NCBI RefSeq assembly: GCF_947568905.1
Contig: NC_079170.1
Span: 36,208,001-36,272,000 of the forward strand
Length of the DNA stretch: 64,000 nt
Reading direction: 5' to 3'
Origin: Ostrea edulis
Lineage: Eukaryota
The position numbers and the translations under genes are program-made. Under the pieces are notes generated by a model that saw only the letters and a list, made by a program, of their open reading frames with translations, ran no database searches and was not told the origin of the DNA. Of this stretch, positions 1 through 34,789 are shown one piece after another. Each line of letters begins with the position of its first letter. Positions within the stretch are counted from its first letter, which is position 1.

Positions 1-204
1 CTGTAAAAAGAAAACTAGAAAAGATATAGTTGTAAAATAAATTGTTGTATAACCTATAAATCCTAGAGCATCAACTGTAAAAGTCTCATTTATTTTGGCG
101 AAAGGGCCAATTTTAGTACTTTGTGGCTCTAGTTCTTTATTTCATAATAAATGAAATAGCTTAAAAGGCTAACAAAGAATTTAACTTGAATAACTTTCAT
201 GTTT

Positions 205-445
205 CTTTTTTTCAAATGAAGGGTCAGGCCCCCTTTAAAGGGGAGATAATCACGAATATGCAAAAATAGAGTGGGGTCTATGGGGACAATCTTTAAAAAT
301 CTTCTCAGGAACCACTGGGCCAATAAAGTTCAAATTTACTTGAAGCTTCCTGATATAAAGTAGATCCAACTTTGTTAAAATGATGGTTCCTGGGGATAGG
401 TGGGTCCACAGTAGGAGATCAAAATGTTATATGGAAAAATCTTAA
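205..445. repeat. Fragment of a non-autonomous interspersed repeat of a type I recall as common in oyster genomes
   Basis: Motifs AAATGAAGGG..GGGGAGATAAT..AAAAATCTTCTCAGGAACCACTGGGCCA..ATGATGGTTCCTGGGGATAGG recognised from memory; family not assigned. Confidence 0.45.
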
Positions 446-560
446 AATTGTCTCTTGGACTATCTAAGCTTGGGCTTCCATATTTTGTCATCTTCACAAG
501 TCAAGGGTTATTAATTCGTTACCTCGAAGCATAAAATGCGTCGTGAATGTCTTACAACAG

Positions 561-1507
561 ATGACGTCATCTCTACTCCCTCCCTAAATGTGACCAGGCC
601 CTGGAGAGCTTTAATGACTCTACCAGAGGAGACAATCCTGGAAATGCTAGTAAAGGTCACCAATTTAGAGTATGATTTGGAAGAAATGACAAAGGTGATT
701 TTGTTTATATAAAAAAGGATATATATAGAATGATGTAATATATATAATCATCTGACATCCAGTTAGATTAAGAGATTCATAGGTTACTTTTCCCCCCAAA
801 TCTTTCCAAATCACAGGAGGCTGAATATCTAAAGGGGACAAGGAACATCCAGGTGGCTGTATGCAAACTTTCAAAAATGCCCTGGGAGAAGACTTTGAAT
901 AAGTTTTGGACTAATGAGGATGAGGCAGAGGAAGAGCTCAGGCAGTTTATAGGGTATGTTGACGAAACTTTTGCAGGAATATTATAATGGAATTAGTTCT
1001 CTATCTTTTCCTTGTTTCTAAGAGCAATCAATGAGATATCTATTTCATGTGAAATGTAGCTTTATGTATATGAAACATCTATGATATGGACGTATGTATA
1101 TAATGTTAATGTCAATGATATCGACATGTCATTCACCCTTAATATACTTCCAAGATTTACAACAGCATCTGCATATGCTATATGTTGTTGTCTACAGGTT
1201 CATATGTATAAGTCATATGATAGTTCCAGTGAGGCGAAGCAATTTCATATCATATCATATTTTACAAAGATGTGAAATGAGATGTCCTTGGAGAGAGGCT
1301 GCGACAATTCACGGAGAGCAAAGAAAAATACCCAGGGTAGAAATCAACACCCATGGTTTTCCAGGTGGAACCCCTGGCATTTTTGAAGGCCGGGAGAGTG
1401 GAAAACACTGTCGACATAACAGTTTTTAATGAGGAAATGGTAAGTAAGATGGAACATATAATCATCATATAATGATATTGTTAACGTCTAAAAAAAAAAA
1501 AAAAAGC

Positions 1508-1569
<62 letters not shown>

Positions 1570-2461
1570 GAATTGAGTCAATGTAGTCTGATTGGCAAGC
1601 ATTACTCCGCGTATGTGTGGATCTTCCTTCTCTGAAGGAGGACCACACATTCATAATTTCCACTTCATGGAGCGGAGTCAGCGACACGAAAAAGGCCATG
1701 GAACTAATGTACCCCAACAAAGGCACAACCGTTGTTGTATATTACAACAAAAAGAGTAAGTTCAAAATTAAGAAATAAAACTTTTAATAAGTTTTAACGC
1801 AAGTTTATCTAAGCTTTCAAGTTTTCACATTATTGTAAAGCAAAATATTTTGTTTCAGGTAACTGCATCCAGCCCTTTGTGTGTCTTTCTTCTAGCAAGA
1901 GTAAGGTCAAAACTTTGACAACATTTGTAGAAGGGCCCACAAAGACAGCCTTCTTCGAAAAGTTATTTTCCCAGGTCAACAAAAAGGGAAATATTCTTGT
2001 TCTGCACTGTGGAAAAGGTAAAGTATATCTTGTATGTAGTATATATTTTAAACTGTTTATGCTATTGATTGCTAATGCATTGTTTGGTGCTCTATATTCA
2101 TAATGTGCTAATTATTTATTAATTTGTGTTAAACTTTGGATCCTTAAGACAGTATATGATCAACACCTTTGAACAATTGTTGGTTTTTTTCTAGACATAT
2201 ACATATTTGGTATGATTGTGGTCTTGGCCACCTGATCAGCAATGCAAAGGATCCTGTGAGGGATTTCCAATTCACCGTGGAATTTTCTGATTTACTTAAT
2301 TACATATTGGTATGCTAAGTTCTAGATATTGCTAGGCAATTGATCAACATCAATATTTTGCAGGAGAAGCCCTACAAGCAGGACTGAAGAAGGGCTTCAA
2401 TGTTGTTGGAGTAGATGGCAAAAATGACATGATCAGATCCTGCAACAGACTTCTTTATTAG
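561..2461 (+). pseudogene. Multi-exon gene or pseudogene encoding a DNA amino-methyltransferase (N6/N4, beta-class)-like protein; probably 5'-incomplete
   Basis: Hand-spliced AG/GT exons: 561-694 (DDVISTPSLNVTRPWRALMTLPEETILEMLVKVTNLEYDLEEMTK), 817-953 (EAEYLKGTRNIQVAVCKLSKMPWEKTLNKFWTNEDEAEEELRQFIG), ~1270-1439 (..PMVFQVEPLAFLKAGRVENTVDITVFNEEM), 1570-1755 (..SDWQALLRVCVDLPSLKEDHTFIISTSWSGVSDTKKAMELMYPNKGTTVVVYYNKK), 1859-2017 (SNCIQPFVCLSSSKSKVKTLTTFVEGPTKTAFFEKLFSQVNKKGNILVLHCGK), 2364-2461 (GEALQAGLKKGFNVVGVDGKNDMIRSCNRLLY*). Phases match for 694/817, 1755/1859 and 2017/2364; 953/1270 does not match. In-frame stops at 1278, 1338 and 1584. Confidence 0.65.
1510..1565. repeat. (AT)n microsatellite in an intron of the MTase-like gene
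   Basis: About 27 uninterrupted AT units, preceded by a poly-A run at ~1490-1505. Confidence 0.97.
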
Positions 2462-2944
2462 ATTAAATTATAAAATATTGATTTGCAACCGAAAAGAATT
2501 GATTGAAACGTGTATCAGTCTTTCTTTTTTGTTTTCTTTTTCATGAGCCAATAAAGTTTAGTCATCTCATTGATGATAAAACAAGGAAATCTATGAAATG
2601 GTAAAGTAAATTGACTGTTTTGCCTCTAGATAATTGGCCATACATTGCTTGAATTGACTGTACATAGATAGACATTGAAAGCCTGCATTGAATCTGGAAA
2701 AAAAGTCGTCTCATGCCTGCATTGGTGTAACACGTAACATCATTCAAGCCCTGCGTTGGCTCTACAAAAATTGCTTCAAATGAGTCCGGCAAACGGTCAT
2801 CAACAGCCTACATCATCTCTACATAATAAGTTTAGTCGAGACATGCAGTGACTCTGTATAATTACATATGGATCCTGAGATAGCCACTTCGCATTCCACA
2901 GTACATATCTGGATCATGCAGTGTTCTGATTCATTTGTAACAGA

Positions 2945-3650
2945 GTAGTCCAATGCCTGCATTGGCTCTTGAGAGAGTGGTCCAATGCCTGCATTGGCTC
3001 TTGAGAGAGTGGTCCAATGCCTGCATTGGCTCTTGAAAGAGTGGCCCAATGCCTGCATTGGCTCTTGTGTGAGTGATCCAATGCCTGCATTGGCTCTTGA
3101 AAGAGTGGCCCAATGCCTGCATTGGCTCTTGAGAGAGTGGCCCAATGCCTGCATTGTCTCTAGAGAGAGTGATCCAATGCCTGTATTGGCTCTTGACAGA
3201 GTGGCCCAATGCCTGCATTGGCTCTTGACAGAGTGGCCCAATGCCTGCATTGACTCTTGAGTGAGTGATCCAATGCCTGCATTGGCTCCTGACAGAGTGG
3301 TCCAATGCCTGCATTGACTCTTGAGTGAATGATCCAATGCCTGCATTGGCTATTGAGAGAGTGGTCCAATGCCTGCATTGGCTCTTGACAGAGTGGCCCG
3401 ATGCCTGCATTGGCTCTTGACAGAGTGGCCCAATGCCTGCATTGGCTCTTGAGAGAGTGGCCCAATGCCTGCATTGTCTCTTGAGAAACTGGTTCAATGC
3501 ATGCATTAGCTCATGACAAAAATTATTCCAGTGCCTGCATTGGCCATTGAAAAAGAAACCAATTGCCTTCATTGGCCTTTGAGTGGTCCAATTCTTGCAT
3601 TGACCATTGAGAGTCGGCATTGGCTCTCTCGAGATTAGACCAATGCTAGA
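2945..3650. repeat. 32-bp minisatellite with an internal palindrome (CCAATGC-CT-GCATTGG)
   Basis: CCAATG recurs at 2950+32n through 3462 (17 in-phase units), followed by about 6 decaying units. Consensus CCAATGCCTGCATTGGCTCTTGAGAGAGTGG(C/T). Confidence 0.95.
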
Positions 3651-5349
3651 GCCACACAATGATGATATCTGCTCTACAGATAGTCATGGAATTTCTGCAT
3701 TGGCTTTAAAATGATAATATTCTTGTACATTGTAACCATTTGCGAGAAATACCCATGCAAAGTTTCATTTCGTAATATTGGTTGTTGCATTGTAAACTAA
3801 TTCAATTTCCTCATGTTTATTCATATTATGTGTTAATAATGATTGGATCCAAATACGCAATGACATAGATACCCATTTCAGGCGTATTTATAATTACCGT
3901 AAAAACAAATTGCCAAATGGAGAAAATTTGCAACAAATATAATCGATAGTATGTTTTTGTGAATGGATAGTTTAAACCATATCCTTTGAATCTCGTTACC
4001 AATATGATTATCAACAACTTTTAAAATAAATTAACTCAAATTCATTGATTTTGATACTAAAGCCACCATTTCTTTTCAAATCACCCCAAACATTGATCTT
4101 ATATTAGAAAAAAATAGTTTGGACAAAAAAATTAGTTCAGAGTCCGTTACATGTAACATGTGGATCGCTATCTATGAATTGCTTACATAATTTACTGTGT
4201 CGGATTTAACTGGCGGCAATACTGCATGTTATGGTAAGTCGTATTGTAGTTTAAATCTATTATTTTGAATTCCTTTTTGCCTGACCAGGTCATGCTAATA
4301 TTCAGCCCAAAATTTGAATGTACTGTAAATCAAAGAAAGACTCGCTACCAATGTACGTAAAGTCAAGTTAAATAAAACAGTTATTTCGAATGTTGACAGT
4401 CTAAAGCTGCGTAGTAACAATTTTGTAAAATAAATAAAGCAAAAATTATTCGATATGATATCAGTACCATACAAGAATACTTGCTAAAGCCTGAATATTT
4501 TCCGATATCCCAAAGTGAAAAACGATGCCATGTACATTTTAGTCACTAGGCCTAACAGTTTCGGTAACTTTCGTTTCGTTCAATGATAATGTTTATGATC
4601 ATAATGTAAAACTACCAAAATTGTACAGTTTTTAAGCAATGATGCAATGAAGATGCTTTGTGAACGACTTTAAAAGATGAAAACAACTAGGTATTGAAAA
4701 TGAACATCTATAGCCTAGTAAAAGGGCAAAACAAGCTACAACCGAAAACTATTATTAGGTGAGGGAATTTCCCTTGCTTTAAAAATAAACAACGAACTAA
4801 AATGACCTATACATTACACGAAATAAAAAACGTAGTTTCTTTCTCCATAAGATACTTAAATCAGCCATATTATCTGTAAAATTCAAGTTTACCACCACCA
4901 ACGTATTATAACCGTAATATTTTTCAGCAATCCGGAATATCGTTTTTTGAAAAATAAAAATAGTGCTCCTAGCTCGTCCTAAAATATTTTTGCATTTATG
5001 GTCAATTGAAAAGGTGTATATTATAAAAATACTTCAAATATTTTGGGCGAGGTGAAACCAGTATGGCAAAACCTTTACCAAATAACCAGTTTTTGGTGAA
5101 AAATGACAAAAATACGGTACCATATCCGGTTCTAGTATGTATACAGCTTTAGTTGTGCTCTTATTTTTAAAATCTAACATGTTTTTTAAACCCCGGATTC
5201 TGATACATATTTATAACACCAATACTCCTATTCAACATTTACTTTCATTTTTATATATTTTAAGGGCCATATTTTGGGGTTTGTGAATCAGGTTCTTTGT
5301 TATTCCTCTAACTAAGTTCATATATGATTTTTATAACAGTCGGCAACAA

Positions 5350-5587
5350 AATCCGAATAATATCAAACATCACCAGACAGGCCCTGAATTTAAGCCCATT
5401 AAGTAGACGGGAAGCCACTGGGTCAACCAAGGCAGACATGGCGCAGAAGTGTTGGCGCCGAGGTGAAGTCCACCGGAAGGACTTGGGCCGAGCTGAAAAG
5501 GATCAGCTAGAACCCCGTGCGTTGGAGGAGTGTTGCTACAGCCTTATGTTCCTCGAGGAATCAAGAGGCATAATTCAAGTAAGTCAG
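5350..5587 (+). mobile_element. 3' end of an RTE-clade LINE (degenerate)
   Basis: Frameshifted translation NITRQAL..GQPRQTWRRSVGAEVKSTGRTWAELKRIS*NPVRWRSVATALCSSRNQEA* matches the typical RTE ORF C-terminus; followed by a TCAAGTAAGT tail. Confidence 0.85.
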
Positions 5588-5700
5588 AATGTTGGGTTAT
5601 GTTTAATTTTATTATGCAATTCACAAAATCAATACATAGCTAAACTATTGTCTCCGTACGCGGAGGAAACAAATGAAACAAGATAATTCAGATAATCTAT

Positions 5701-6200
5701 TTTAAGGTAACTCCATACTCGCAGTTTTATCTGATACAAGTTCTAAAAGTGTATTTATTTACAATTATTAGAGTTCAAACTAACAAATTATCAAATAAAA
5801 TATATAGGTCATCCCACTTTTTAAGAATCACCGTCAAAAAATTGCAATTTTCATAAAATGACGATATCAAAGTTTAATAAACACTGGTTATGACGATATA
5901 ATAGCATTCATAACAACTTCATAAAACTGTTTCTTCACAAAAATATATACAAGTTGTCTGTAAGAAATAAAGAAAGACTATCGCATAATAGACTTGATAG
6001 AGAAATCAATAAAAGCAGAGTTATTGCCCTTGGATTCAATATTTTGAAACTTATCATTGGTTATACATCTATGACTTTTGAAATATCTTATTTTCAATAA
6101 GATTTTTTTTACAATAACTATCGAATAAGACTCCAACAAAAGGTACGTTCCAATCATGCATAAATCTAAATAAATCATTGATTTTACAAATTCTAATGAC
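5701..6200 (+). mobile_element. TTAA-flanked non-autonomous DNA transposon end (Kolobok-like terminus), copy 1
   Basis: Starts TTAA|GGTAACTCCATACTCGCA..TTTATCTGATA. The same end occurs inverted at ~18780-18843, and internal segment 5955-6195 matches 17625-17895 in reverse. Only one end was found. Confidence 0.6.
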
Positions 6201-10083: not shown

Positions 10084-12280
10084 TCAACCGCGTAGAATGA
10101 TCTTGTCGAGGTAACAGTTTAGGGAAGTAAATACTACTGTACAAGAAATAAATGTCATACTGGTTTTTGTGGCAACAGTCGTGGGAACCGATGAGTCTGG
10201 TGATGGAGCATTTTTTCCTCCAGAGAGTCCTTGAATAAAATGTTTCCACATTATTTATAATACAACACTAACAAACAAATGGTGCTATGAATTCGAACAT
10301 TACTATACACATCAATACATTTTAGTATATAACATATTTACCATCTCCTTCAAAGTTTCCACAGGTAGGAAAACCGTTCGGGACAGCCGGCAGGTGAGGA
10401 AAGGACTCGTTTAGAAGTATGCTCATCCCGTCTGCTGAGTGAAGCTGGATGTGACAATGCATGATCCACAATCCTGGATTATCTGCCTTGATTCTCACCA
10501 CCACGTAGCCACCGCTAGGGACGATAACCGTGTCTTTGTGTGGAGGATCCACCAGATTAAGACCAGATATGTTTCCATTCCTCCATGACGGATCACTCCA
10601 CGTAGCGTTATTGCAGAAACTCTGATCTTGGGTGGTTCCACCTCCACAATCTATGTCTGTGTTCTGTGAAATGAAATCTCCAGTTGAAGTATTATAATTA
10701 CCATACCCCATCTTTAGAACTTGAAAACTGTGACCGTGCATGTGAACTGGATGAGACCAACCCTTTCCTCTTCCCATGTTCACAAACACAAACTGAATGG
10801 TGTCGTTGTGGTTTAGGTCTATACTATGTGTACAAGAACATATCTTCTGCTCTCCACAGTCAACTTTTGAGCACTGATCTGTTAACTCAGTTGGCTGAGA
10901 TAGAGCCGACACAGTTGGAAATGCAAATCCTACACCGTTAATAGAATCAGGGGTAAAATCTGGTCCCGGAAAGGCAAAGTTCAGGAAATATTCATGAAAT
11001 GTTCCGGATTTAACACTTGGTACCTCATTAGGAGAATCACTTCTGACATTATCCAATGTTATGCACTCGATATTTTGCTCCTTCGGATAAAACGAAAAGG
11101 GGCAATTCAAGGCCAAACATTTATCAGACGGAAGACATTGTTTTCTCGTGGAAAATATATTTACGTAATTCCCATTCCCTCCCTTGTAATGCAAAATAGC
11201 CTCTGCAATGGTGCGCCTGTTGACCTCTAATGTATGTCCTCTAATCATGTAGTTTCCGATGGATTCGTTAGCATGAATGATAAAGTCGAACCTCTCTCCT
11301 GGATGTATAATCACTGATTCTACAACTACTGGTTTTATGTAATAGCCATCAGTGGCAATAACTGTCAAAGGATGGCTGTCTATGGAGATTCTATATGGAT
11401 ACATCGCTGCAGCGTTTATCACGCGAAATCTGTAGCGTTTGTGGCGATGAACTTCGAACACCTCTAGAGGAGCCTCGTTATGTGCTTTGGTGATAGGGTC
11501 GTTATATCTTCCTTTGCCGTTTATAAGACCTGATTCAGCGTACCACAAACTAAATTTCGAACCATCCAACGCCATCGATGGTTTGATTTCTTTTCTGTTA
11601 ATAAAAACACCGGCATCAGAATAAAGAAATGCTTGGTCGACATCATAATCATGATTCCAGTCCTGAATCTGCATCACAAACTCTTCAGCCACTCCATGGA
11701 CAATGTGTGGTGGATGGCGCTCTTTGATAATCAGTGCACCGTACAAGCCCTTTGTTCTCTGTGCTCCAACATGGGAATGATACCAATATGTACCACTCGG
11801 TCTAGCTTTGAAGGTGTATGTAAAAGTTTGTCCTGGATTGATAGGGCACTGTGTCACAAATCCGACCCCGTCCATATAGGGTGTGTCTTTCTGTGGAAGG
11901 CCGTGCCAATGAATGGAGACTGTGTCGGAATACAACTTATTCTTGACATGAACTTTTAAGGTTTGACCCTCGTACACGGTAATTGTCGGTCCTGGTAGAG
12001 TGCCGTTTGCGACGATGACAACTCTTTGCATTTCCCAGCCGTCCGCTGTAATTACTTCATCAACATCTATTGGTGTAGCAGAACTTGTGTTAGTGACGTC
12101 ATAACGGTACAGACGGCCATCGTTAGAAAACACGGCCTTTTCTGTTTCGTGGAACATGGTGAGCGAAGTGGCTATCTCTAAAGACGTTTCACAGATTAAC
12201 TCATGCTCGTTGCAGACAAAAGCTGACCCATTCTTGAGCAGCACAAGAAAGTAGACAACAATACCATATATGGAATACAT
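10084..12280 (-). CDS. Laccase-type multicopper oxidase, paralogue A (coding exons 12280-10342 and 10229-10084)
   Basis: Signal peptide. Cu motifs HWHG, GTYWYHSH, HPVHMHGH and HCHIQLHSADGM are intact. ATG directly follows a CTCTTCAG acceptor. Phase-1 donor G|GTAAAT at 10342/10341; acceptor TTTTATTCAAG|GA at 10230/10229 gives GLSGGKNAPSPDSSVPTTVATKTSMTFISCTVVFTSLNCYLDKIILRG*. Confidence 0.93.
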
Positions 12281-18735: not shown

Positions 18736-19796
18736 ATCAAAATTGGTACCGTATGAGTTTTACATTGTAACCCTAATGAATGGAAATAAATACACTTTGT
18801 ATACTTTTTATCAGATAAAAATGCGAGTATGGAGTTACCTTAAGGATGCAAGACTGTGAATACGCTCAGGACTTAATGAGAAAAGTGCTGCGAATGCACA
18901 TATACTCCAAAGTTGCGTATACTGAAATCTGCAGAATCATAGATACATTCGAGGAGTCAACAACAAATGACCGTAAGTAGCAATTTTTCTACTCTTTCAC
19001 GATTTCTCATTTTTAATCAGACTTTTAGAAAATCGTGTCCGATAATCATCATTTATATTTTGTGCGTACATTTTAAATTTCTTAATCTATTGATTATGAC
19101 AAATCAATTTTATACAATGCTTTTACAATATACATGTAGTCATAACCATTAACTTGTGTTAAAAGCATTCATATTCCTCAAGATTTAAATTATTGCTCGT
19201 CGAAGTTGGCGCGTTCACACAACGTTCTGAAGAGTGCTCTTGCGAGTGGCATGGCTGATGAAATAGATAGACTATTCAAATGTGAAACAATACAATAACA
19301 CTAATGAACGAGTTTTTAAAATATATAAAAATTCATTTATTCCTACACACATATTTCCAAACATCTCCTTTGCAAAGTTGCTTTAAATTCATAAATTGAC
19401 CTACATTAAGAAAAGTTCACCTATATATGTAACACAGCTCTGAATCTAGTGTTAGGAAATATTCTAATTGCATCAATACTGCTGATACAGCTCTTCTGCT
19501 TCCAAATCTTCCGAAGATTATGCCAACACGTGATCTTAACAGTGCTATATCGTACACCTTTTAATTCTTAATTCTTTAAATACTTTAAATTGACTGCAAT
19601 GAATCCTTCGACGTTACTGTATATATTGATAGGGGAAACAACTATTATAATTCAAGAAAAAAATTATAATTTGAATTATTCAATACGATTGGTGATATAA
19701 TTGATATGTGACTTGATAGTCTAATTGTCTGAAAAACCTTACATTACATTAACATTGTTCTACTGGGTTGAAATTTTGATGCTTTGTTTTACGATA

Positions 19797-19962
19797 ATGA
19801 AAGGTGAAGATAACGAACAGTGATCAATCTCATAACTCCTATAAGCATTACAAAATCGAGAGTTGGGTACACACGAACCCCTGGATAAACCAGAGGTGGG
19901 ATCAGGTGCCTAGGAGGAGTTAGCATCCCCTGTCGAGCGGTTACACCCGCCGTAAGCCCTAT
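19797..19962 (-). mobile_element. Penelope-like element 3' module
   Basis: ATGAAAGGTGAAGATAACGAACAGTG..GATCAGGTGCCTAGGAGGAGTTAGCATCCCCTGTCGAGCGGTTACACCCGCCGT; duplicate at ~48799-48964. Confidence 0.85.
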
Positions 19963-20179
19963 GTTTTGGTAATAAATTTCGATACAGCAATAATGATAGC
20001 AGAAAATGATATTATGGGAATATTTTCAAAACAATACTCTCATTTACCATGGAAAATAGTTTTTATACTTTAACTTATTTGGGAAAAAATCGTGAATATC
20101 TTTGATAATTAATATTTTAAAACAATTATCCTTAAAAGAATGAATACAGACATACAGCTACAAATCTTCAGGGTAACTT

Positions 20180-20410
20180 TAGTGGTTAGCATGTTTGTTT
20201 CGGGCTTGGAAGGCCGCGAGTTTAAGCCCCGTCGTCACCGCGTCAACCCTAAAACGGTGCAATATATAGTGACTGTTTCTCGCCAAACACTCGGCACTAA
20301 AAATTGAGAGTCTCGAGTCTTTTCTTGTGACCTTTAAAACAGTGGTATCTTTCCGGTTCAGGCGTTGATATGTTATAGAACGTTTAGTACTATGGCACTG
20401 AGCGCCAAGC
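20180..20410 (+). mobile_element. tRNA-derived SINE (degenerate)
   Basis: A-box-like TAGTGGTTAGC and B-box-like GAGTTTAAGCCCC, then a TAGTGACTG..TCGCCAAACACTCGGCA core; duplicate at ~49183-49413. Confidence 0.55.
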
Positions 20411-20775
20411 GTGTGTTTGAAATTTTGGTTATCAGCCTCTAATGACGTCTTAATATGTGCTAAAAATATCCTCGAAGGGACATAAAGCAAAGAGTAAACA
20501 CATTTACTAATTCTATGATAGTAAGAAGACTTGATATACCTTTTTCGTATCAAAGAAAGAATATGGTGCATACCAATTAAAGAACATTCACTTGTGGCTA
20601 CTCATTTTTAACTATATTGATTACTTTTCATAGTGATTAAACGGTAATGCAATAAAACTAAAGACTGCTTTGGAAAAAAATGTGCTTAGGTTTGAATTTC
20701 GAATGCGGATTACAATTTGTGAAAACATCTACTATCTGCCCCAAAGCACATCTTGTGGAATTACTCGTACATGAT

Positions 20776-20913
20776 ACAGGGAATGCTTACTCCTCCTAGG
20801 CACCTGATCCCACCCCTGATATACCCAGGGGCCCGTGTTTGCATTTACTTTTAGTTACGTAATTCTTTATAGGATTCCTGAGATTAAACACAGGTCGTTA
20901 CTTTCACTTTTTC
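20776..20913 (+). mobile_element. Penelope-like element 3' module, ~370 bp upstream of the lacB ATG
   Basis: ACAGGGAATGCTTACTCCTCCTAGGCACCTGATCCCACC..; duplicate at ~49779-49916. Confidence 0.8.
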
Positions 20914-21278
20914 TATGACCATTGTTCGGTATATTTACTTTTACATTGTTCACTGCTCGCTATCTTCACTTTTTCCCATATATTAGAGTTCTCTTTCAAT
21001 ATTCAATGGCATAAAATATAACCGTTTTTATTTGGAGAATATGCGAATCCCTAAATTCTGCTTTTAGAGGACGTATGCACAGTTTAAGACAATATTGCAC
21101 GCGCAATAAAATTGTCATGAATGAAAATTGCATGCAGTATGGTGCTTTTCTGTATTCATGCAGCATAGCAAATTTTCTCGGGTAACCTTAACTAGCTTTT
21201 AAAAGTAAAAGGCAATGTTGAATGATGTAAAAAGATAAGTGTTTTATAAACATTTCATACTTATCAATATAATTTCAG

Positions 21279-23788
21279 ATGTATCTCTTCAACGGAATTG
21301 CTGTTCTCTTCTTTCACGTTTTTCTAACAGATGGACCATTTGCTTTTGTCTGCAATGATTTGGAATTGATATGCGAAACGTCTTTAGAAATATACACTTC
21401 GATGACGATGTTTCATAAAACAGAAAAAGCAGTCTTTCCAAGAGATGGTCACTTGTACCGCTATGACGTCATTAACACAAGCTCTGCTACACCGGTAAAT
21501 AGTGATGAAGTAATTACAGCAGACGGCTGGGAAATGCAAAGAGTCGTCATCGTCGCTAACGGCACTCTACCAGGACCGACAATTACTGTGTACGAGGATC
21601 AAACCTTAATAGTTCATGTCAAGAATAATTTATATTCCGACACGGTGACCATTCATTGGCACGGTCTTCCACAGAGAGACACACCCTACATGGACGGGGT
21701 AGGCTTTGTGACACAGTGTCCTATTCATCCAGGACAAACTTTTACATACACTTTCAAAGCTAGACCGAGCGGTACACACTGGTATCATTCCCATGTTGGA
21801 GCACAGAGAGCAAAGGGCTTGTACGGTGCACTGATTATTAAAGAGCGCCATCCACCACACACTGTGCATGGAGTGGCTGAAGAATTTGTGATGCAGATTC
21901 AGGACTGGAATCATGACTATGATGTAGACCAAGCTTTTCTTTATTCTGATGTCGGTGTCTTCCTGAATAGAACACAATTCCAGCCCTCGGTGGCGCTGGA
22001 TGGTTCTAAATTCAGTCTTTGGTACGCCGAGTCAGCTCTAATAAATGGAAAAGGGAGGTATTACCATCCAATTACTCGAGTACATAATGAGGCCCCTCTC
22101 GACGTGTTTAACGTTGATGGAAACAAACGCTATAGATTTCGCGTTATAAACGCTGCAGCAATGTATCCATATAGAATCTCCATAGACAGTCATCCTTTGA
22201 CAGTTATTGCCACTGATGGCTATTACATAAAACCAGTAGTTGTAGAATCAGTGATTATACATCCAGGAGAGAGGTTCGACTTTGTCATTCATGCTAACGA
22301 ATCCATCGGAAACTACATGATTAGAGGACATACATTAGAGGTCAACAGACGCACTATTGCCGATGCAATTTTACGTTATAATGGAGCAGATCAGGCTTAT
22401 AAAAACATATCGTCAACTGAAGCGCAATGTCTTACATCGAACAAGTGCTTGGTGTTAAATTGCCCATTTTCCTTTTATCCGAAAGAGCAGAATATTCAGT
22501 GTATAACAATAGATAATATCAAAAGCTATGCTTCTGATGGCGTGCCAGAAGTTAAACCAGAAGCCTTTCATGAACACTTCCTTAACTTTGCTTTTCCAGG
22601 ACCAGATTTATTCCCCGACACAGTTAATGGTATAGGGTTTAAGTTTCCGACTGTATCAGCAATATCTCAGCCTAACGAAGTTACAGAACAATGCTCAAAT
22701 GCTGACTGTGGGGAGGAAAATATATGCATTTGTACCCACAGTATCGACTTGAACCACAAAGACACCATTCAATTTGTGTTTTTGAACATGGGAAAAGGAA
22801 AAAGTTGGTCTCATCCAATTCATATGCATGGTCATTCTTTCCAGGTTCTGAAAATGGGATATGGTAACTACAACATTTCATCTGGAGAATTCGTTTCACA
22901 AAATTTAGACATAGACTGTGGTGGGGGAACCACCCAAGATCAGAGTTTTTGCAATAACGCCACGTGGAGTGACCAATCATGGAGAAATGGAAACATACCT
23001 GGTCTTAATTTGGTGGATCCTCCACACAAAGACACGGTTATCGTCCCTAGCGGTGGCTACGTGGTGGTGAGAATCAAGGCCGATAATCCAGGATTGTGGA
23101 TGATACATTGTCACGTTCAGCTTCATTCGGTGGACGGAATGAGTTTACTTCTGAACGAATCTTTTCCTCACTTACCGGCTGTCCCTGAAGGTTTCTCTAT
23201 TTGTAGAAACTTTGGAAATTATGGTAATGTAAAATTCTCTTGATCTTTTAAATGGAAGTTTTTATACAATAATCCTCATCATTAGAATGGGAATGCTAAT
23301 TTAAATCGTTTGCAATATTAGGTAACCCGAATTCTTGGTTCAAATGTGCTATGGGATGAACAATGATTTCTGCTTGTTCATGCAACTTCAACTGACCACC
23401 TTTCTGCCTTTGTCATTATGTCAACTGTATGCAAAGAACCCATGAACAAAGTTTTTGCACAGACGGAGAAAATGATAATTGTCACATACATAATAACAAA
23501 AGAACAAAAGGTGGTCAGTTGAAGTTGTTTGAATAATATCAATCCCATAGCTACTATTACTGATACCACTAATACTTTTACTTCTCTAACTACTAGTGAT
23601 GATAAAAATAACGAATTTGATTTCATGAAGGTGTCTTTTATTTGATTGTAGGACCCCGGATTCCACCAGTATTGGACGCTGACAAAGACTCCAAAAATAG
23701 CATGGCCTCCCTCTCAGTTTCACTTTGTTTCTGTGTTTTACTTTCATTAGTAACTTACTTCTATCTAGAAATTCAGATATACTTGTAA
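21279..23788 (+). CDS. Laccase-type multicopper oxidase, paralogue B copy 1 (coding exons 21279-23223 and 23652-23788)
   Basis: Signal peptide. Motifs HWHG, GTHWYHSH, HPIHMHGH and HCHVQLHSVDGM. TTTCAG|ATG. Phase-1 donor G|GTAATG at 23223/23224; acceptor TTGTAG|GA at 23651/23652 gives GPRIPPVLDADKDSKNSMASLSVSLCFCVLLSLVTYFYLEIQIYL*. Confidence 0.93.
23383..23527. repeat. 21-bp perfect inverted repeat with a 103-bp spacer in the lacB intron
   Basis: CAACTTCAACTGACCACCTTT (23383-23403) and AAAGGTGGTCAGTTGAAGTTG (23507-23527); duplicate at 52394-52538. Confidence 0.85.
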
Positions 23789-24591
23789 CTAAAACTCCAA
23801 CAAAATAGTGTTTATATCATGAATGGATGAATGTTGTTAATTTGTATCGGTTACTTTTTTAGTTTGTGGAAATCCTTTCTTCCATGTATTTCGTCCTGTG
23901 TTATCCATTATCAGTCTACGGTGTAAAAAAAAAAAAACATATATAGGTCCTTATATCTTTAAACCGGTTTTTTTCCTTATTGTCGGACACAACAAAGGTG
24001 CAAATTGGAGACAAGGTATCTTTAAAGATTCTCAGTTTCAAGTTAACATCAAAGTGTATAAATGTGGAGTCACGGACTGTATTTCAGTGATTTCATTTAC
24101 ACTACTGGTAATTTTGAAAACAAAAATTATGCCATGCTTATGTTTATTTAATGATGGACGCAATATTAGGATATACCCCCTACAACCACAGACTTATTAT
24201 ATCTCATACTATATTAGATATCTGAACACCTATTTAAGTTTACCTGTTGGTGTCTTTTTCTTGTTTCATTTCTGTATACTATACAAGGTGTGCCCCCTGG
24301 TAAAACGGTTTGATAATGAAATTGTATCATCCCTACTACGTCTTCCAATGTCAAATACGTAGACACCCATCTAAAGATATAGAACAGAGACGAGAGAGCC
24401 AGGCAAGTTAAAACAGAAAGTTCGTTGCATGGAGTATTTCGTTTCATTAATTCATTTAAATCCGAGTGCGGGTAATGACCTTTCTGGTGAGATTTTGACG
24501 GTTCGCTCACGGTAGGAGGCGATAACGATTAGTTAATTACATTACTGAATTCATAGATCTGGTGTCTTGCAACAAAGTGCAAACAAGGACG

Positions 24592-24686
24592 TTGGTATGT
24601 CCAGGGGCCCGTGTTTGTCTAACTCTGAATTTTCTATTCCTTACAGGAGTTACGAGATTGCTCAATGTTCGTTATATTCACCTTTT
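24592..24686 (+). mobile_element. Penelope-like element 3' module, short copy
   Basis: GTCCAGGGGCCCGTGTTTG..GAGATTGCTCAATGTTCGTTATATTCACCTT; duplicate at ~53608-53702. Confidence 0.75.
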
Positions 24687-25704
24687 GTTTATTAGCTTGA
24701 TTTTTTTTACACATACATGATCATGCGGTGTAAAATGTTTTGAGAAAAAAATATATGTTGTTACATGTACGTAATATCGCTATGTAAATACATGTCGGAC
24801 CATCTTTTCATTCATTGGGTTGCACTTTTACAAGCAAATCAATTGATCATTTGTTTATATTTTGAAGTTCATGTTGTTCGATTACAAACATTCTGATGAA
24901 TTTCGAGATGATAAGGTTGTCCTTATCAAACAATTCGTCATCGTTAATCATCCATTTGAGTTTGAATAGAATCAGCAGTATAAAGTATGCATAAGTTTTG
25001 AAAGAGTAAACGAGAAGTTGAAGCTTAAATCTACAAATCAATCAGTTTATTTTTCACGAAGTCTGCAATGAATTAATTCAAAAGAGGTGCGGTTACACCA
25101 ATCGGATAAAATGCACAATGATGTGTGTTTACTTCTTTGTGTGCCTGTGTCTGCATTAAAACAAATCTAATTTTGTGAGAATAACCAACAATTGCTATCT
25201 GATTTTAAAGCAATATAATTTGGTAGTAGTAATATACGAAGCAAACAAATCTATAGAAAAGACGTTTTAAACTCACTGTTAAATTGATTAATGCATGCCT
25301 TAAACAAACAGATTTGGGAAATATTTGATGCAACCAAAACACTAGAAATTTGTAATTAGATCTTATGTAAAAGTACTTTTTTACAAAAGAGCTTGAAAAC
25401 CCAGAATGATCCGTTTAAAAAATACAGCTGGTATTTCGTGGATTGTCGAATGTCATTTTGTACTCATGCTTAGTTCTGGAAATTATCTGTAGCATACCGT
25501 ATATCAAGAGATTTGTGCAAAATTTATTCCAAATAAATAACGAAATCGATCAAACGTAAAAACAGAAACGCAAGGGATTTTTGCATGTATGTTATTGAAT
25601 TTGGGAAATATCTCAAAATGAGTTATGTCCTTTGCGATATACATGTAACTATGTCCATAATTTTATGTGATTATATCAAGCTTTCATGAAAAATTTGAAA
25701 AATC

Positions 25705-25862
25705 GAACACAAAAAGTAATCAATCTTATAATCCTATAAAGAATACAACATTTGATATGGAATGTGGCGAACACGAACTCCTGGAAACACCAGAGGTGAG
25801 ACTAGGGATTTAGGAGGAGTCAGTATTCCCCAATAACTGGTTGGACCCTATATCTTGATCAT
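25705..25862 (-). mobile_element. Penelope-like element 3' module, degenerate
   Basis: ..GAACACGAACTCCTGGAAACACCAGAGGTGAGACTAGG..AGGAGGAGTCAGTATTCCCC..CCCTATATCTTGATC; duplicate at ~54721-54878. Confidence 0.65.
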
Positions 25863-27065
25863 GTTTTCATTTCAGAAATATTTCGCATTATGGTAATCCC
25901 ATACACTAACTTTCCCCTAAGACAAAATATTCTTGTTGGCAAATTTTAGAATAGGAAACACATATAAAGAAGATCTTGTGAGATTTTGTTAGAATTCTGA
26001 TGTTTATTGTTAGAAGGTTTAAGTTTATTTCCCCTGTAGGTGATTTGTTTTCCATCCGGATTTCTTAGAATTTTTTTTAATTCTCATAGGAATTTATTAA
26101 ATGTTTATTTTCTAATACCTTAATTTTTTTTTAAAGATTTTTTCTAATGGTGTATTTCAAAGTCACCTGCGTAAAAGATAATTTTTGAAATGTGTACATG
26201 ATACTCTATTTGCGGACATCATTGAATCTTTAAAAAGTAAAAGAATGGTACGCGAATGTGGTGACACTTGGAAATTAACATATTTATCCACAGAACATAT
26301 TAATAGTATATAATTGTCTGAATATGTAAGACTATTCATCGAAATTCAGTACACAATGCTGAATCTTGTGTAACCTGTGAATTGTTTTTTTTATTTTTAT
26401 ACAGTAGCGCCGAGTTGAAATAATTCAAAAAAGCATAGGTACTGATAAGATTTGCTCGAGAGCTGACTCGACACTTTGTGAAGTACACGTGCACTTTTAT
26501 TGAAGATCGGGGGTCTCTTCGCTAGGATTTAATTCGTTCAATTACATGTAGATAGTTGTTAGTCGCTACAAGTTATTGATATGTGTTCAACATGCGCTAA
26601 ACTTTTCTACTGCAATGATGTCCACGACTAAACATATTCTGTGTCCTACTGACCGAGACTTCTTCCATTGTTTTTATTTCAAATGTTTGCTGCAACATAA
26701 CTGCTCACTGTGATACTTGAATTATTACAGGAAAAGATGTATAAGAGAGCATCCGGTACATGAAATCAAATAGAAATGGAAATAGATACTTTGACATTTT
26801 ATACATGCACTATTCCAACAGTGTGTGTAACATGAAGCGGAGAAATATGAAATCACAATATAGTGCCCCATTCATTAGCAACATGACATTATTTCTCTAT
26901 AATTCCAATGTTATTTATTACAATTGTTTTGATTGGACAAAGATAAATCTAAACGAGAATTTACACATCGATAAATCCAAAAACGCAACAACATAGTGCG
27001 GGGAAAGTATTCAAATTATTGAAGTTGATAATGCAGGGAACGAATTGGAATTATAAGAATCAAAC

Positions 27066-27204
27066 ATTCTTTTTGAAGAATTTATCGATGTGTAAACTCT
27101 GGACATTTTACTCACAAACTTAACATAAAAGTGCTTCGCACTTTTATTCAGTTTGTGAGTAAAATGTCCAGAGTTTACACATCGATAAATTCTTCAAAAA
27201 GAAT
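27066..27204. repeat. 139-bp near-perfect palindrome (long hairpin)
   Basis: 54-bp perfect outer arms, a small internal bulge, a 10-bp inner stem ATAAAAGTGC/GCACTTTTAT and a TTC loop. Confidence 0.93.
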
Positions 27205-28371
27205 ATTTAATCCTATAATATAAAACAAGTCACTAAATTTAATCCCAAAAATCATCATGGATATACAGCAGTTGAGTATTTGTTGAGTGGTTGACATCAC
27301 ACGGTTAATTGTTATGACAGAGTTACGTCTGCTGCTCGTCTTGTGATCGTGAGTTGAACTAAGTGAAAATAAACGGTCATCCAGCGACACCAAATTATGT
27401 GAATCAGACATTTATTTTTAAGATCTTAGCAAACAATTCTTGCACGGGTTCTACATCTAGGTACACGTGTACCTACACCCTGACAGACACCCATGTACAC
27501 TCAGTATTTACTATATTCGGATAGACTCTTATAGAATCCAGTGAGTGTATTTACACCCGGATTTGTATCACATTTACGTATGCTGATCAGTACCAGCAGT
27601 ATTGTGAACTTATCTTGTTTGTTATGTTTATAAAAAGAAATGCTTCATTATCTGCCTTTCATAATGGCAAGAACAACCCACAACTCATTACAATTCACGG
27701 TGTTTAACAGAACGCGAAATAAATTACAGATATCAGTGATAAACACTTACGAAACATTTAATTCATTTATCATGACAAACATTTTCACTTATTTTCCATC
27801 AACTAGATACCTGTCTTATCTACAAGGTCAGTGAATTTTTTTTAAACGATTAGAACTCAGTACACTTGCACTTACGTTGAAAATGAAACATATGTCTTAC
27901 TTTCTTTTCTATTACATGAGTGGATGTGCTAAATGCGTGGATCCGTATTGTTATTGCAATGTTATAATTCATTGTAAGATTGAAAATAATAGTGATATAC
28001 AAAACATTATTATTCTATTTCTGAAGTATTGTGTCTATACTGCAAGATGCACTAAGAAACCTTTAAACTTGCCCGCAGCAATATCACAAATGAAATTATT
28101 TTATGAAACACACAAATATATAGCATATAAGAATGGTGAAAAGAAAAATTTTTATACTCAATGGAATAGATGGAACTTAATATTTACTTAAAACATGCCT
28201 CTCTCTTTTTCTTTCTTTCTCACTATCTCTCTCCATGAACATAATGATAATTACATATGACTTGGTGTATTCATGTACTTTCTTATGTGTACAAAAACCA
28301 ACAATAATAATAATAAAAAAAAATTTAAAAAAGATTGAAATAAGTTCTATGTGTGAGTAGAATAATGGAAT

Positions 28372-28689
28372 AATGTAAAACTTATACGGTACCAATTTTG
28401 ATGCACCAGATGCGCATTTCAACAAATAATGTCTCTTCAGTGATGCTCAACCGAAATGTTTGAAATCCGAAATAACTATGAAGTTTTAGATCTAAATATA
28501 ACCAAAAACAGCGTGCCAAACAAGTGGAGCCAAATTCGTCCAAGGATAAGAGCTATGCATGAGGGAGATAATCCTTAATTTTGAAATGAATTTCTAAATT
28601 TTATAAGAGCAATTAAATATACATCCGTATTTTCAAGCTAGTAACGAAGTACTTAGCTACTGGGCTGTAGAGACCCTCGGGGACTAACA
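28372..28689 (-). mobile_element. Hammerhead-bearing Penelope-like repeat, inverted single copy
   Basis: Reverse complement of the 18209-18555 unit; duplicate at 57390-57707. Confidence 0.75.
28403..28446 (-). ncRNA. Minimal type I hammerhead ribozyme (stem II variant GAC/GUU)
   Basis: Minus strand reads GCAUCA CUGAAGA GAC AUUAUUU GUU GAAA UGCGCA UC UGGUGC. Confidence 0.72.
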
Positions 28690-28886
28690 CCACTGCCTGT
28701 CCATCACATAAGTTAATTATTTTACTCCCTCATTTACAATGACTTCTTGAAGGTATAGTAATACGTTGTGTAGGATATAACCAGTGACGTTGAACACATG
28801 TTTATTTGCTTTCTCATAATATTTCCAATGGAAGAACGAAGCGATTACAAACTGCTTTTATCAATGTACCTCATCTACAAAACATT

Positions 28887-29136
28887 CCCGTGGGGATCCG
28901 GGTTAGAATAGGTCCTCAGTACACCTTGCTTATCGTAAGAGGCGACTAAATGGGGCGGTCCTTCGGATGAGACCGCAAAAAACCAAGGCCCCGTGTCACA
29001 GCAGGTGTGACACGATAAAGATCCTTCTCTGCTCAAAGGTCATAAGCGGCGAGCATAGGCCTAAAGTTTACAGTCCTTCACCGGCAATAGTGATGTCTCC
29101 ATATGAGTGAACTATTCTCAAGAGAGACGTAAAACA
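28887..29136 (+). mobile_element. SINE-like repeat with a V-domain-like core
   Basis: Homologous to 16036-16285; duplicate at 57905-58154. Confidence 0.7.
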
Positions 29137-29894
29137 GTCTACAAAACGTTTGTTGCTGTCTGTATAAGTAACCATACAATCACATCGGAGAAAGAAAATG
29201 TTTATTCTCTTTTTCGGATACCTCGGCAGCTTTAAGCGAAATGCCACGAATTTTAACATCATGCTAATCTTCCTTCTATTGTTGAATAATTGGCGAAGAA
29301 ACTTACTCTACTTATTGTAAAGTATAAGTAAAAACGCGAACAGAAACCGTGAAAATATTTGTATTACTGCATTTACATTCACTCTAAATTTTACAAAATG
29401 TGAAACACCGAAATAAAAACAATCACCTGATCAACACTTGCGCGTTTCTGTACTTTTATGATCAACATGTGAAACACCGAAATCTTTTTTCACGTACACG
29501 GCTTAAGTGTGAACCCGATGTTCTAAATATTTGGAGTTTCCCTGTACTGTAAAAAATCTGCTGTTTGATCGACTTTCCACGCTTAGTAACCTAAACATTT
29601 TATCAGTTCAAATCCACTATCAATAAATGGAATTACATAAGATATGCCAAGTGATCCTAATCCGTTCCTAAGATGTGTTACCCCGTAGTTGCAAAGTAGG
29701 ATATCAATGTTAATTTAAGAAATAAAAAACTTTTAGAAATAATGTTCAAATACTATAAAATATTCAAGTTTTATCACTACCTAAAAACAAGTTATGAATT
29801 TTAACTAGTATAATACTGGATATCACAACTACAACTTGAAACTCTTCAGATAAAGAAGTGACGAAAAGTGTATACATCTTAGTAATGGCTAAAG

Positions 29895-34600: not shown

Positions 34601-34789
34601 CTGAAATAGATGTAAATACATTTTTGGATAAATAAAGCATCAATTTGATTTAGACAAATCTATCCTAATCTTACCATTGAAAGGAGAGTTATACCCTGAC
34701 TTTCAAATCACAGATATTCAATTTGATATGTAACAAATGTGTTACCCGAATGCAGTGATGTTTGTTTCCTTATATGTTCAGTGCATCAG

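What the first reader, a model, noticed from the sequence alone, without database searches (positions are those of the whole stretch)
561..2461. Intron-containing gene resembling a bacterial beta-class DNA amino-methyltransferase with a degenerate catalytic motif
Seen: six exon-like segments, three junctions phase-compatible, invisible to the ORF track. Established: beta-class N6A/N4C MTases (N6_N4_Mtase, PF01555) run in the order [IxxGDxLExLKxxxDxSVDLIxTDPPY] ... [LKxxGxxxI] ... [IxWxK] ... [PxKPxxLxxxLIxxxSxxGDxVLDPFxGSGTTxxAAxxxGRxxIGxE], with the SAM-binding motif last. Inferred alignment: VFQVEPLAFLKAGRVENTVDITVFNEEM, LKEDHTFII, VVVYYNKK and PTKTAFFEKLFSQVNKKGNILVLHCGKGEALQAGLKKGFNVVGVD occur in that same order. 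The DPPY/SPPY catalytic position reads NEEM, so the protein would be catalytically dead or repurposed (for example as a DNA reader), and it is fused to an N-terminal helical region (WRALMTLPEE..EEMTKEAEYLK). Such domains are rare in animals; bdelloid N4CMT is a known horizontally acquired case. An intronised version here could mark a transposon- or virus-borne, or domesticated, epigenetic module.
Basis: partly seen in the sequence, partly recalled or inferred. Interest (0 to 1): 0.8.

Follow-up and report, generated by a model that had tools for sequence, protein, structure and literature searches.

The report
Decayed transposon-borne methyltransferase-like gene copy
The exon chain is real, but here it is a truncated, stop-interrupted copy of a gene carried by an oyster-specific DNA transposon, whose intact relatives end in a bacterial-type (beta-class) DNA methyltransferase fold that has lost its catalytic motif.

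Summary
The six exons at 536-2461 (+) are real. Each matches, exon by exon, an oyster-only protein family, including a spliced 597-aa Magallana transcript product. The window is Ostrea edulis chromosome OX387710.1.

This copy is not an intact gene. It lacks about the first 300 codons, has two in-frame stops in the frame used by intact relatives, and is annotated as two short genes (151 aa and 141 aa).

It lies in a 5'-truncated copy (568-4148) of a TIR-bounded element. That element has about 50-nt inverted ends, 4-bp flanking duplications, subterminal 32-bp palindrome-bearing repeats and copies on three chromosomes. Full-length copies also carry a divergently oriented DUF7869 gene, which I take as a candidate transposase.

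No profile library places the protein in PF01555 or any other family. Only sub-threshold matches to the class I SAM-binding loop appear, at the extreme C-terminus.

An AlphaFold model of an intact paralogue (core pLDDT 78-91) hits only beta-class N6A/N4C DNA methyltransferases and MT-A70 proteins in Foldseek (best E 5e-5). The catalytic (D/S/N)PPY position reads N-E-E in all family members, while an HCGKG loop and the acidic residue after beta-2 are kept.

The parts
568..4148 (+). 5'-truncated copy of a TIR-bounded oyster mobile element: 3' half of gene 1, the 32-bp repeat array and the right terminal inverted repeat. The left end and gene 2 are absent.
   Evidence: blastn block L001 10033-13613 (= window 568-4148) matches L002 9690-13493 and L003 11277-15016 at 88-91%. 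All three end at the same terminal word. No N-terminal exons lie in the 9.4 kb upstream.
536..2461 (+). Gene remnant, given as one part. It has six exons homologous to residues ~297-597 of the full-length family protein. It is broken by one 5' truncation and two in-frame stop codons in the relatives' frame. No frameshift was seen in the last four exons.
   Evidence: tblastn of P0008, P0001 and P0006.
536..1429 (+). Annotated gene LOC130048070 (XP_056000161.1, 151 aa). It uses a start codon in flanking DNA, reads the third exon in a frame different from intact relatives, and ends before the methyltransferase-like core.
   Evidence: P0007 matches the window at 100% in three blocks. The locus look-up is.
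1587..2461 (+). Second called gene (141 aa), made of the last three exons. It encodes the strands and helices from beta-5 to the C-terminal SAM-loop segment.
   Evidence: Called gene at L001 11052-11926.
1353..2461 (+). Span homologous to the beta-class methyltransferase-like domain (P0001 residues ~54-224), introns included. N-E-E sits at the motif IV position and HCGKG at the motif I position.
   Evidence: AF2 secondary-structure order. Foldseek results. Column shares.
1510..1565 (.). (TA)28 microsatellite inside the third intron.
   Evidence: TRF.
2942..3516 (.). Array of 18 copies of a 32-bp unit. Each unit holds a 7-2-7 palindrome (CCAATGC NN GCATTGG). The array continues in degenerate form to about 3660. 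It is the element's right subterminal repeat array.
   Evidence: TRF. The pattern search gave 18 hits at 2950-3543 against 0 expected. The same array sits in L002, L003, L005 and L007, and also near the left end of L003.
4099..4148 (-). Right terminal inverted repeat (~50 nt) of the element. Similarity to the other copies stops at 4148.
   Evidence: Terminal 16-mer found at window 4148 on the minus strand. Alignment of five ends is A5.

Best explanation
Window 568-4148 is a dead, 5'-truncated copy of an oyster-specific TIR DNA transposon-like element.

Full-length copies (13.7 kb in O. edulis locus L003) hold two divergently oriented multi-exon genes:
- Gene 2 is a DUF7869 protein. I infer it to be the transposase.
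- Gene 1 is a 600-690-aa protein. It has an unassigned N-terminal half, a helical linker and a C-terminal ~170-aa domain with the circularly permuted fold of beta-class N6A/N4C DNA methyltransferases.

In that domain the (D/S/N)PP(Y/F/W) loop is N-E-E throughout the family. The glycine-rich SAM loop (HCGKG) and the acidic residue after beta-2 are kept. I infer that it does not methylate exocyclic amino groups and acts as a binding module for DNA and perhaps SAM. A speculative target is the element's own arrays of palindrome-bearing 32-bp subterminal repeats.

The window copy keeps only the last six exons. It has two in-frame stops and its start codon lies in flanking DNA, so at most it yields short, non-functional products.

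Shown: exon homology, truncation, stops, TIRs, flanking duplications, dispersal, fold match and motif substitution.
Inferred: loss of catalysis, transposase role of gene 2, accessory DNA-binding role of gene 1.
For: - Exons and family.
- The window's own product is the 151-aa P0007, with a second 141-aa call.
- Two in-frame stops in one exon and none in the other five.
- No N-terminal exons within 9.4 kb upstream.
- Shared block on three chromosomes, ending at one terminal word.
- TIRs of ~50 nt.
- 4-bp direct repeats flanking the two complete-ended copies (CTAT, CACA).
- L002 is an internal-deletion derivative and L003 holds all exons.
- Gene 2 with DUF7869 (E 2e-9) is conserved in Saccostrea, Ostrea and Magallana.
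- An uninterrupted 597-codon ORF sits on a 2-kb Logan contig, so the full-length form is spliced and expressed.
- Between genera dN is 0.22-0.35 with saturated dS. Among the three O. edulis copies dN/dS is 0.5-0.65.
- Fold: AF2 core pLDDT 78-91. Foldseek hits M1.HpyAVI at E 5e-5 with TM 0.46-0.58, and all of the top 40 PDB hits are beta-class or MT-A70. The second model gives the same top hit. Phage N-4/N-6 methylases lead in BFVD.
- The C-terminal 55 aa match the motif I region of classical class I MTases at E ~0.01.
- Motif shares.
Against: - No curated profile (Pfam, NCBIfam, PHROGs, PADLOC) reaches threshold.
- The AF2 model rests on 16 closely related oyster sequences (mean pLDDT 63). TM-scores near 0.5 and rmsd ~8 A are modest.
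- I could not see which residues Foldseek aligned. Placement of N-E-E at motif IV rests on strand order.
- The transposase role of DUF7869 is unproven, and the superfamily is not identified.
- TIR words were not recovered in Magallana, and only one similar word was found in Saccostrea.
- dN/dS of 0.5-0.65 among O. edulis copies does not by itself prove decay.
- No expression data exist for this locus.
Confidence: 0.8

Rival explanations
1. One reading: a functional, intron-containing host gene in this window encodes a catalytically dead or repurposed beta-class methyltransferase (a domesticated epigenetic reader).
For: The last four exons are open and have canonical splice sites. A Met-initiated frame from 1353 could still give ~170 aa. 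The genome annotation calls genes here. dN/dS versus paralogues is below 1.
Against: The first ~300 codons are absent. There are two in-frame stops in the relatives' frame. The annotated product ends before the methyltransferase-like core. The copy is bounded by a transposon end on one side and a truncation on the other. dS to its paralogues is only 0.07-0.10, so open exons are expected by age alone.
Confidence: 0.08
2. The C-terminal domain is not methyltransferase-derived. It is a generic Rossmann-like alpha/beta domain, and the motif resemblance and Foldseek hits reflect common topology plus a chance glycine-rich loop.
For: There is no PF01555 or PF05063 hit. Profile matches to class I MTases are sub-threshold (E 0.01-0.3). 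TM is about 0.5. The alignment behind the model is shallow.
Against: All 40 best PDB matches are permuted amino-MTases, not assorted Rossmann folds. The same top hit comes from a second model. Phage N-4/N-6 methylases lead the viral library. Several family members independently give the same Methyltransf_25 start-of-domain match at their extreme C-terminus, which only a permuted fold can accommodate. The acidic residue after beta-2 is conserved.
Confidence: 0.12
3. Gene 1 is a passenger. It would be a host or horizontally acquired gene captured by the transposon, not a component the element needs. The family's conservation would then reflect a host function of some master copy.
For: No known transposon superfamily is defined by such a protein (my knowledge). 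Full-length proteins are predicted in Magallana and Saccostrea and are expressed.
Against: Wherever it could be checked, the gene sits in the same arrangement: gene 2 (-), gene 1 (+), 32-bp array. This holds in three genera at non-syntenic sites. No stand-alone relative was found outside oysters in 1.84 billion representatives.
Confidence: 0.2
4. The shared 3.6-kb block is a segmental duplication rather than a transposable element.
For: The window itself holds a 16-kb, 99.4% duplication of other genes, so duplication is active in this region.
Against: The copies lie on three different chromosomes. They have ~50-nt inverted ends, 4-bp flanking direct repeats and unrelated flanks.
Confidence: 0.04

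Closest known systems
Beta-class (permuted) N6-adenine/N4-cytosine DNA methyltransferases, Pfam PF01555 (M1.HpyAVI, M.MboIIA, CcrM, M.BceJIV)
   Same: Predicted strand and helix order runs from beta-4, alpha, beta-5, alpha, beta-6, beta-7 to alpha-Z, beta-1, alpha-A, beta-2, alpha-B, with the SAM loop last. These are the best Foldseek matches. A glycine-rich loop and the acidic residue after beta-2 are present. Like M1.HpyAVI, there is only a short segment where a target-recognition domain would sit.
   Different: No HMM match. Motif IV reads N-E-E instead of (D/S)PPY. Motif I reads HCGKG rather than FxGSG. The domain is embedded at the end of a 600-690-aa multi-exon animal protein. No sign of a restriction partner.
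MT-A70 family (Tetrahymena MTA1/AMT1 complex, METTL3-METTL14, METTL4)
   Same: Eukaryotic, permuted topology. Second tier of Foldseek hits (E 6e-4 to 4e-2). The family includes catalytically inert partners (METTL14, MTA9), which set a precedent for pseudo-enzymes (my knowledge).
   Different: No PF05063 match, no DPPW. The oyster domain keeps a canonical GxG loop, which MT-A70 proteins largely lack (my knowledge). Not pan-eukaryotic; restricted to Ostreidae.
Bdelloid rotifer N4CMT (PMC8885841)
   Same: An animal, intron-bearing gene with a permuted bacterial-type amino-MTase domain.
   Different: N4CMT is a clear PF01555 member with SPPY, and replacing the motif's Ser and Tyr (SPPY to APPA) abolishes activity. 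It is fused to a chromodomain and is a host gene that marks transposons. The oyster protein has no PF01555 match, has no PPY, and is itself carried by a transposon.
DAM domains of DIRS/LTR retrotransposons (bioRxiv 10.64898/2026.05.21.726589)
   Same: A prokaryote-type DNA adenine methyltransferase fold carried by a eukaryotic mobile element.
   Different: Those are Dam-type (non-beta) domains inside retrotransposon polyproteins and keep the Asn-Pro-Pro pocket. Here the element has TIRs and 4-bp duplications, the gene is separate and multi-exon, and the pocket motif is lost.
Two-gene TIR transposons with a DNA-binding accessory protein (PIF/Harbinger Myb-like ORF, En/Spm TNPA)
   Same: A transposase candidate plus a second gene, with subterminal repeat arrays at both ends that could serve as binding sites. 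The comparison is from my knowledge of those families.
   Different: The accessory protein here has a methyltransferase-like fold, not a Myb or TNPA type. Binding to the repeats is untested. The transposase superfamily is not identified.
Phage ParB-like / N-4/N-6 methylase fusion proteins
   Same: A 494-aa phage protein named 'ParB/Sulfiredoxin' is among the best BFVD matches to the C-terminal domain model (rank 3), and the unnamed rank-1 hit is 507 aa. A G-G-N-H-Q-R stretch in the N-terminal half of P0008 recalls the ParB/Srx motif (memory only).
   Different: No PF02195 match. The N-terminal half was modelled at pLDDT 25-40, so the likeness is an untested lead.

Membership tests
Beta-class N6A/N4C DNA methyltransferase (PF01555 N6_N4_Mtase) | Match to the family profile at or above the curated score | tested here: not met
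   No PF01555 hit even at E<=10 for the six exon translations or for P0001-P0006, P0008 and P0017.
Beta-class N6A/N4C DNA methyltransferase (PF01555 N6_N4_Mtase) | Permuted order: catalytic-loop strand (motif IV) and beta-5 to beta-7 precede helix X and motifs I-II at the C-terminus | tested here: met
   AF2 secondary-structure order in P0001. Foldseek best hits are beta-class enzymes in PDB and BFVD. The motif I region sits at the extreme C-terminus.
Beta-class N6A/N4C DNA methyltransferase (PF01555 N6_N4_Mtase) | Catalytic (D/S/N)-P-P-(Y/F/W) after beta-4 | tested here: not met
   The position reads N (11/11), E (10/11), E (11/11), then I/T/K/V. The window copy reads N-E-E-M.
Beta-class N6A/N4C DNA methyltransferase (PF01555 N6_N4_Mtase) | SAM-binding glycine-rich loop after beta-1 and an acidic residue at the end of beta-2 | tested here: inconclusive
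   H-C-G-K-G in 8/8 and D/E in 8/9. The loop aligns to GCGxG of classical class I MTases at E 0.01-0.3. Actual SAM binding was not tested.
Beta-class N6A/N4C DNA methyltransferase (PF01555 N6_N4_Mtase) | Methyl transfer to DNA | not testable with these tools
Loss of activity is inferred from the motif IV substitution.
MT-A70 family (PF05063) | Profile match and DPPW-type motif | tested here: not met
   No PF05063 hit. N-E-E sits at the motif position. Only the fold resembles it.
TIR (cut-and-paste type) DNA transposon | Terminal inverted repeats at both ends | tested here: met
   L002 9068 and 13493; L003 1278 and 15016. About 50 nt are alignable. The window copy has the right end only (4148).
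TIR (cut-and-paste type) DNA transposon | Target-site duplication flanking complete copies | tested here: met
   4-bp direct repeats CTAT (L002) and CACA (L003) sit next to the termini. Only two copies were checked.
TIR (cut-and-paste type) DNA transposon | Dispersed copies with unrelated flanks, including internally deleted derivatives | tested here: met
   Three O. edulis chromosomes. L002 lacks 9.3 kb that is present in L003. Magallana and Saccostrea loci are non-syntenic.
TIR (cut-and-paste type) DNA transposon | Element-encoded transposase with a recognised catalytic domain | tested here: inconclusive
   Gene 2 matches only DUF7869. Short D-G-M-D-Q and G-H-T-H-E-D-I-D stretches look DDE-like to me, but nothing was found in PDB.
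DAM-carrying retrotransposons (DIRS/LTR) | Dam-type domain inside a polyprotein with reverse transcriptase | tested here: not met
   No Dam, RT or recombinase hit in P0008, P0017 or the element ORFs scanned. The gene is multi-exon with TIR ends.
ParB/Sulfiredoxin N-terminal domain fusion | ParB-like domain upstream of the methyltransferase fold | tested here: inconclusive
   No PF02195 hit. The N-terminal half has pLDDT 25-40. The only hint is that a phage protein named ParB/Sulfiredoxin is among the BFVD hits.

The most novel reading that the evidence does not exclude
Oysters harbour a so far undescribed family of two-gene TIR DNA transposons. Its second gene descends from a bacterial or phage beta-class DNA methyltransferase, possibly a ParB-methylase fusion. 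The gene has been intronised and kept under purifying selection across Ostrea, Magallana and Saccostrea after losing its catalytic PPY pocket. It would now serve as a sequence-specific DNA-binding (perhaps SAM-sensing) accessory factor that recognises the element's own palindromic 32-bp subterminal repeats.
Probability: 0.2. Interest if true: 0.75.

Novelty: new variant of a known kind. Interest (0 to 1): 0.42.

Why it matters
For this window the result is mainly corrective. Two annotated O. edulis genes (LOC130048070 and the adjacent 141-aa call) are pieces of one decayed transposon gene, not a domesticated epigenetic module.

For the family it gives a first fold assignment to a set of "uncharacterized" oyster proteins. 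It adds a case in which a prokaryote-type amino-methyltransferase fold travels on an animal DNA transposon and persists without its catalytic motif. This complements bdelloid N4CMT (an active host enzyme) and the Dam domains of retrotransposons (pocket retained). It also gives a concrete protein-plus-repeat pair whose structure and distribution can be studied.

Tried and rejected
- Pfam on each exon alone gave nothing. PDB sequence searches with single exons gave only noise.
- NCBIfam, PHROGs and PADLOC on full-length relatives gave only sub-threshold motif I hits or nothing.
- tblastn against phages gave E~3 hits to mycobacteriophage 'DNA methyltransferase' genes. On inspection these align to the N-terminal motif I of a non-permuted enzyme, so they say nothing about class.
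With the three long proteins it found no bacterial or archaeal relative.
- The full-length AF2 model was poor (pLDDT 47), so the N-terminal half stays unassigned. The ParB-like idea is only a lead.
- PDB searches with gene 2 exons gave nothing.
- No paper mentions DUF7869 or run ERR1758959.
- A search for TIRs in the Magallana locus failed.
- I considered a DIRS-type retroelement and rejected it: no RT or recombinase, multi-exon genes, TIR plus 4-bp duplications.
- I did not send a joined spliced translation of the window's exons to any tool. All window searches were exon by exon, by reference. Whole-protein evidence comes from natural relatives returned by the tools.
Full report
**What is in the window.** Reading 1-3600 shows six open segments on the + strand with GT..AG introns: 536-694, 817-953, 1270-1439, 1587-1755, 1859-2017 and 2364-2461 (TAG). 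An AATAAA follows about 90 nt later. The window is AT-rich (35% GC), has no N, and holds no second copy of these exons. Taken one at a time, the exon translations match no Pfam family even at E<=10 and nothing meaningful in PDB.

**The exons are real.** An exhaustive phmmer search with the 56-aa exon 1587-1754 against 1.84 billion representatives returned five proteins at E 3e-27 to 5e-8. Word-indexed searches with the best hit, with a family alignment and with the longest member returned only oyster proteins, all "uncharacterized". They come from Ostrea edulis, Magallana/Crassostrea gigas and angulata, and Saccostrea.

One of them, P0007 (XP_056000161.1, LOC130048070, 151 aa), is the window's own annotated product. 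It matches 536-694, 817-953 and 1271-1426 at 100%. The locus look-up places the window on O. edulis OX387710.1, with window base 1 at L001 9466. It also shows a second called gene at window 1587-2461 with a 141-aa product. That length equals the last three exons as I delimited them.

The full-length form of the family is 597-687 aa: P0008 in Magallana (with XP_065931600.1 in its 90%-identity cluster) and P0017 in Saccostrea. P0008 is encoded by an uninterrupted ORF on a 2,022-bp Logan contig, that is, a spliced transcript. tblastn of P0008 covers all six window exons in order, as residues ~297-597.

**This copy is broken.**
- No match to residues 1-296 exists in the 9.4 kb upstream, where the next gene is an acyl-CoA oxidase on the other strand.
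- DNA similarity to the paralogous loci starts only at window 568. The ATG at 536 is therefore flanking sequence.
- In the frame used by P0001, P0002, P0008 and P0017, the remnant has two in-frame stop codons. The other five exons are open.
- The annotated 151-aa model enters the third exon in a shifted frame and ends before the methyltransferase-like part.

The tally is one 5' truncation and two stops. I give counts only, with no coordinates and no changes. My notebook names the exon concerned.

Among the three O. edulis copies dS is 0.07-0.10 and dN/dS is 0.5-0.65. Between genera dS is saturated with dN 0.22-0.35. The family as a whole is therefore constrained. The open exons in the window are no older than expected for a recent copy.

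**It sits in a mobile element.** The three O. edulis loci lie on three chromosomes. They share one block: window 568-4148 = L002 9690-13493 = L003 11277-15016, at 88-91% identity.

All three blocks end at the same 16-nt word. In L002 (9068..13494) and L003 (1278..15016) the same word occurs inverted at the other end, as part of a ~50-nt terminal inverted repeat. Both complete-ended copies are flanked by 4-bp direct repeats: CTAT and CACA.

L003 (13.7 kb) contains every exon of the full-length gene. L002 (4.4 kb) is an internal-deletion derivative. The window copy has lost the left part.

Downstream of the gene lies an array of 32-bp units, each with a CCAATGC-NN-GCATTGG palindrome. The window has 18 hits against 0 expected. 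Related units lie near the left end of L003.

On the opposite strand, full-length copies carry a second multi-exon gene that matches Pfam DUF7869 (best exon E 2e-9). It is conserved in Saccostrea, O. edulis and M. gigas, at non-syntenic sites with the same gene order. I read it as the candidate transposase. That is an inference, and I could not name the superfamily.

**What the protein is.** On whole relatives, sequence libraries give only sub-threshold matches. Methyltransf_25/11/23 score E 0.04-0.25 against cut-offs of 21-27 bits. Two NCBIfam methyltransferases also appear. All of these hits cover the last ~35-55 residues and the first ~40 profile positions, which is the beta-1/motif I/beta-2 part of a class I SAM methyltransferase. 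Family profiles against PDB repeat this at E 0.009-0.3. A Rossmann-type start at the very end of a protein only makes sense if the fold is circularly permuted.

An AlphaFold2 model of the intact paralogue P0001 has mean pLDDT 63 and pTM 0.57, with residues 100-200 at 78-91. Its order is strand, helix, strand, helix, a hairpin of two strands, helix, strand, helix, strand, helix. In Foldseek against PDB, the top 40 hits are all permuted amino-methyltransferases:
- M1.HpyAVI, E 5e-5, TM 0.46-0.58
- M.MboIIA, CcrM, M.BceJIV, TTHA0409 and a type III Mod subunit
- MT-A70 proteins (Tetrahymena MTA1)

METTL3-METTL14 chains follow at ranks 42-50. The poor full-length model of P0008 still finds M1.HpyAVI first. 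In BFVD, phage "DNA methylase N-4/N-6" and N4C enzymes lead.

At the loop after the strand that corresponds to beta-4, the family reads N (11/11), E (10/11), E (11/11). The loop after beta-1 reads H-C-G-K-G (8/8). The residue ending beta-2 is D or E (8/9).

Loss of both prolines and the aromatic residue makes amino-group methylation unlikely. This follows from established knowledge of motif IV. In N4CMT, replacing SPPY with APPA abolishes activity (PMC8885841). SAM binding may survive.

The N-terminal ~300 residues remain unassigned. A ParB-like reading is only a lead.

**Comparison with what is known.** The domain works like, but fails the sequence tests for, PF01555 and MT-A70 (see membership table). 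Bdelloid N4CMT is a true PF01555 host enzyme with SPPY. The recently described retrotransposon DAM domains are Dam-type and keep Asn-Pro-Pro. A beta-class-like, motif-less domain as a separate gene of a TIR element is, as far as the papers searched show, not described. I therefore rate the family as a new variant of known kinds, and the window copy as an ordinary decayed transposon fragment.

**Limits.**
- Foldseek alignments are not shown residue by residue, so motif placement rests on strand order.
- The structure alignment is shallow.
- Only three O. edulis copies and one locus each from two other genera were examined.

Noticed in passing
window 10322-12280 (-), 21279-23243 (+), 32624-34621 (-), 50290-52254 (+), 61621-63618 (-): Five intronless ORFs of 652-665 aa, each with the three multicopper-oxidase domains (laccase-like): a local gene cluster.
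   Followed up: partly
window 18815-35000 and 47817-63997: A 16-kb direct duplication at 99.4% identity that carries two of the multicopper oxidase genes. It is either a very recent segmental duplication or an assembly duplicate.
   Followed up: partly
window 2942-3516 (degenerate to ~3660): 32-bp tandem array whose units each contain a 7-2-7 palindrome. The same array follows the gene in Ostrea, Saccostrea and Magallana, and related units lie at the other end of the full-length element. It could be a protein-binding array.
   Followed up: partly
window 562-569: A perfect TGACGTCA palindrome (CRE-like) lies exactly at the junction between flanking DNA and the truncated element, inside the annotated first coding exon.
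   Followed up: no
L003 10001-13189 (O. edulis OX387711.1): The annotated 363-aa model P0006 appears to omit the second of the six exons, although matching DNA is present. It also reads part of the next exon in a frame different from P0001, P0002 and P0008. The mapped codons include two stops. This suggests the annotation works around defects in a decaying full-length copy.
   Followed up: partly
L003 3594-4131: Four copies of a ~55-nt sequence in alternating orientation (93-94% complementary). This looks like nested MITE-type insertions, and it lies next to a duplicated gene 2 exon.
   Followed up: no
L005 9509-10001, L007 ~4900-6030: Gene 1 and the DUF7869 gene are divergently oriented, with only ~0.5 kb between them in Saccostrea. 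This suggests a shared bidirectional promoter.
   Followed up: no
L002 9040-9067 and 13495-13520: Beyond the 4-bp repeat, the two flanks of the L002 copy share a ~15-nt near-identical stretch. I cannot say whether this is a longer duplication or an insertion into a local repeat.
   Followed up: no
window 1510-1565: (TA)28 microsatellite preceded by a poly-A run, inside the third intron of the remnant.
   Followed up: no
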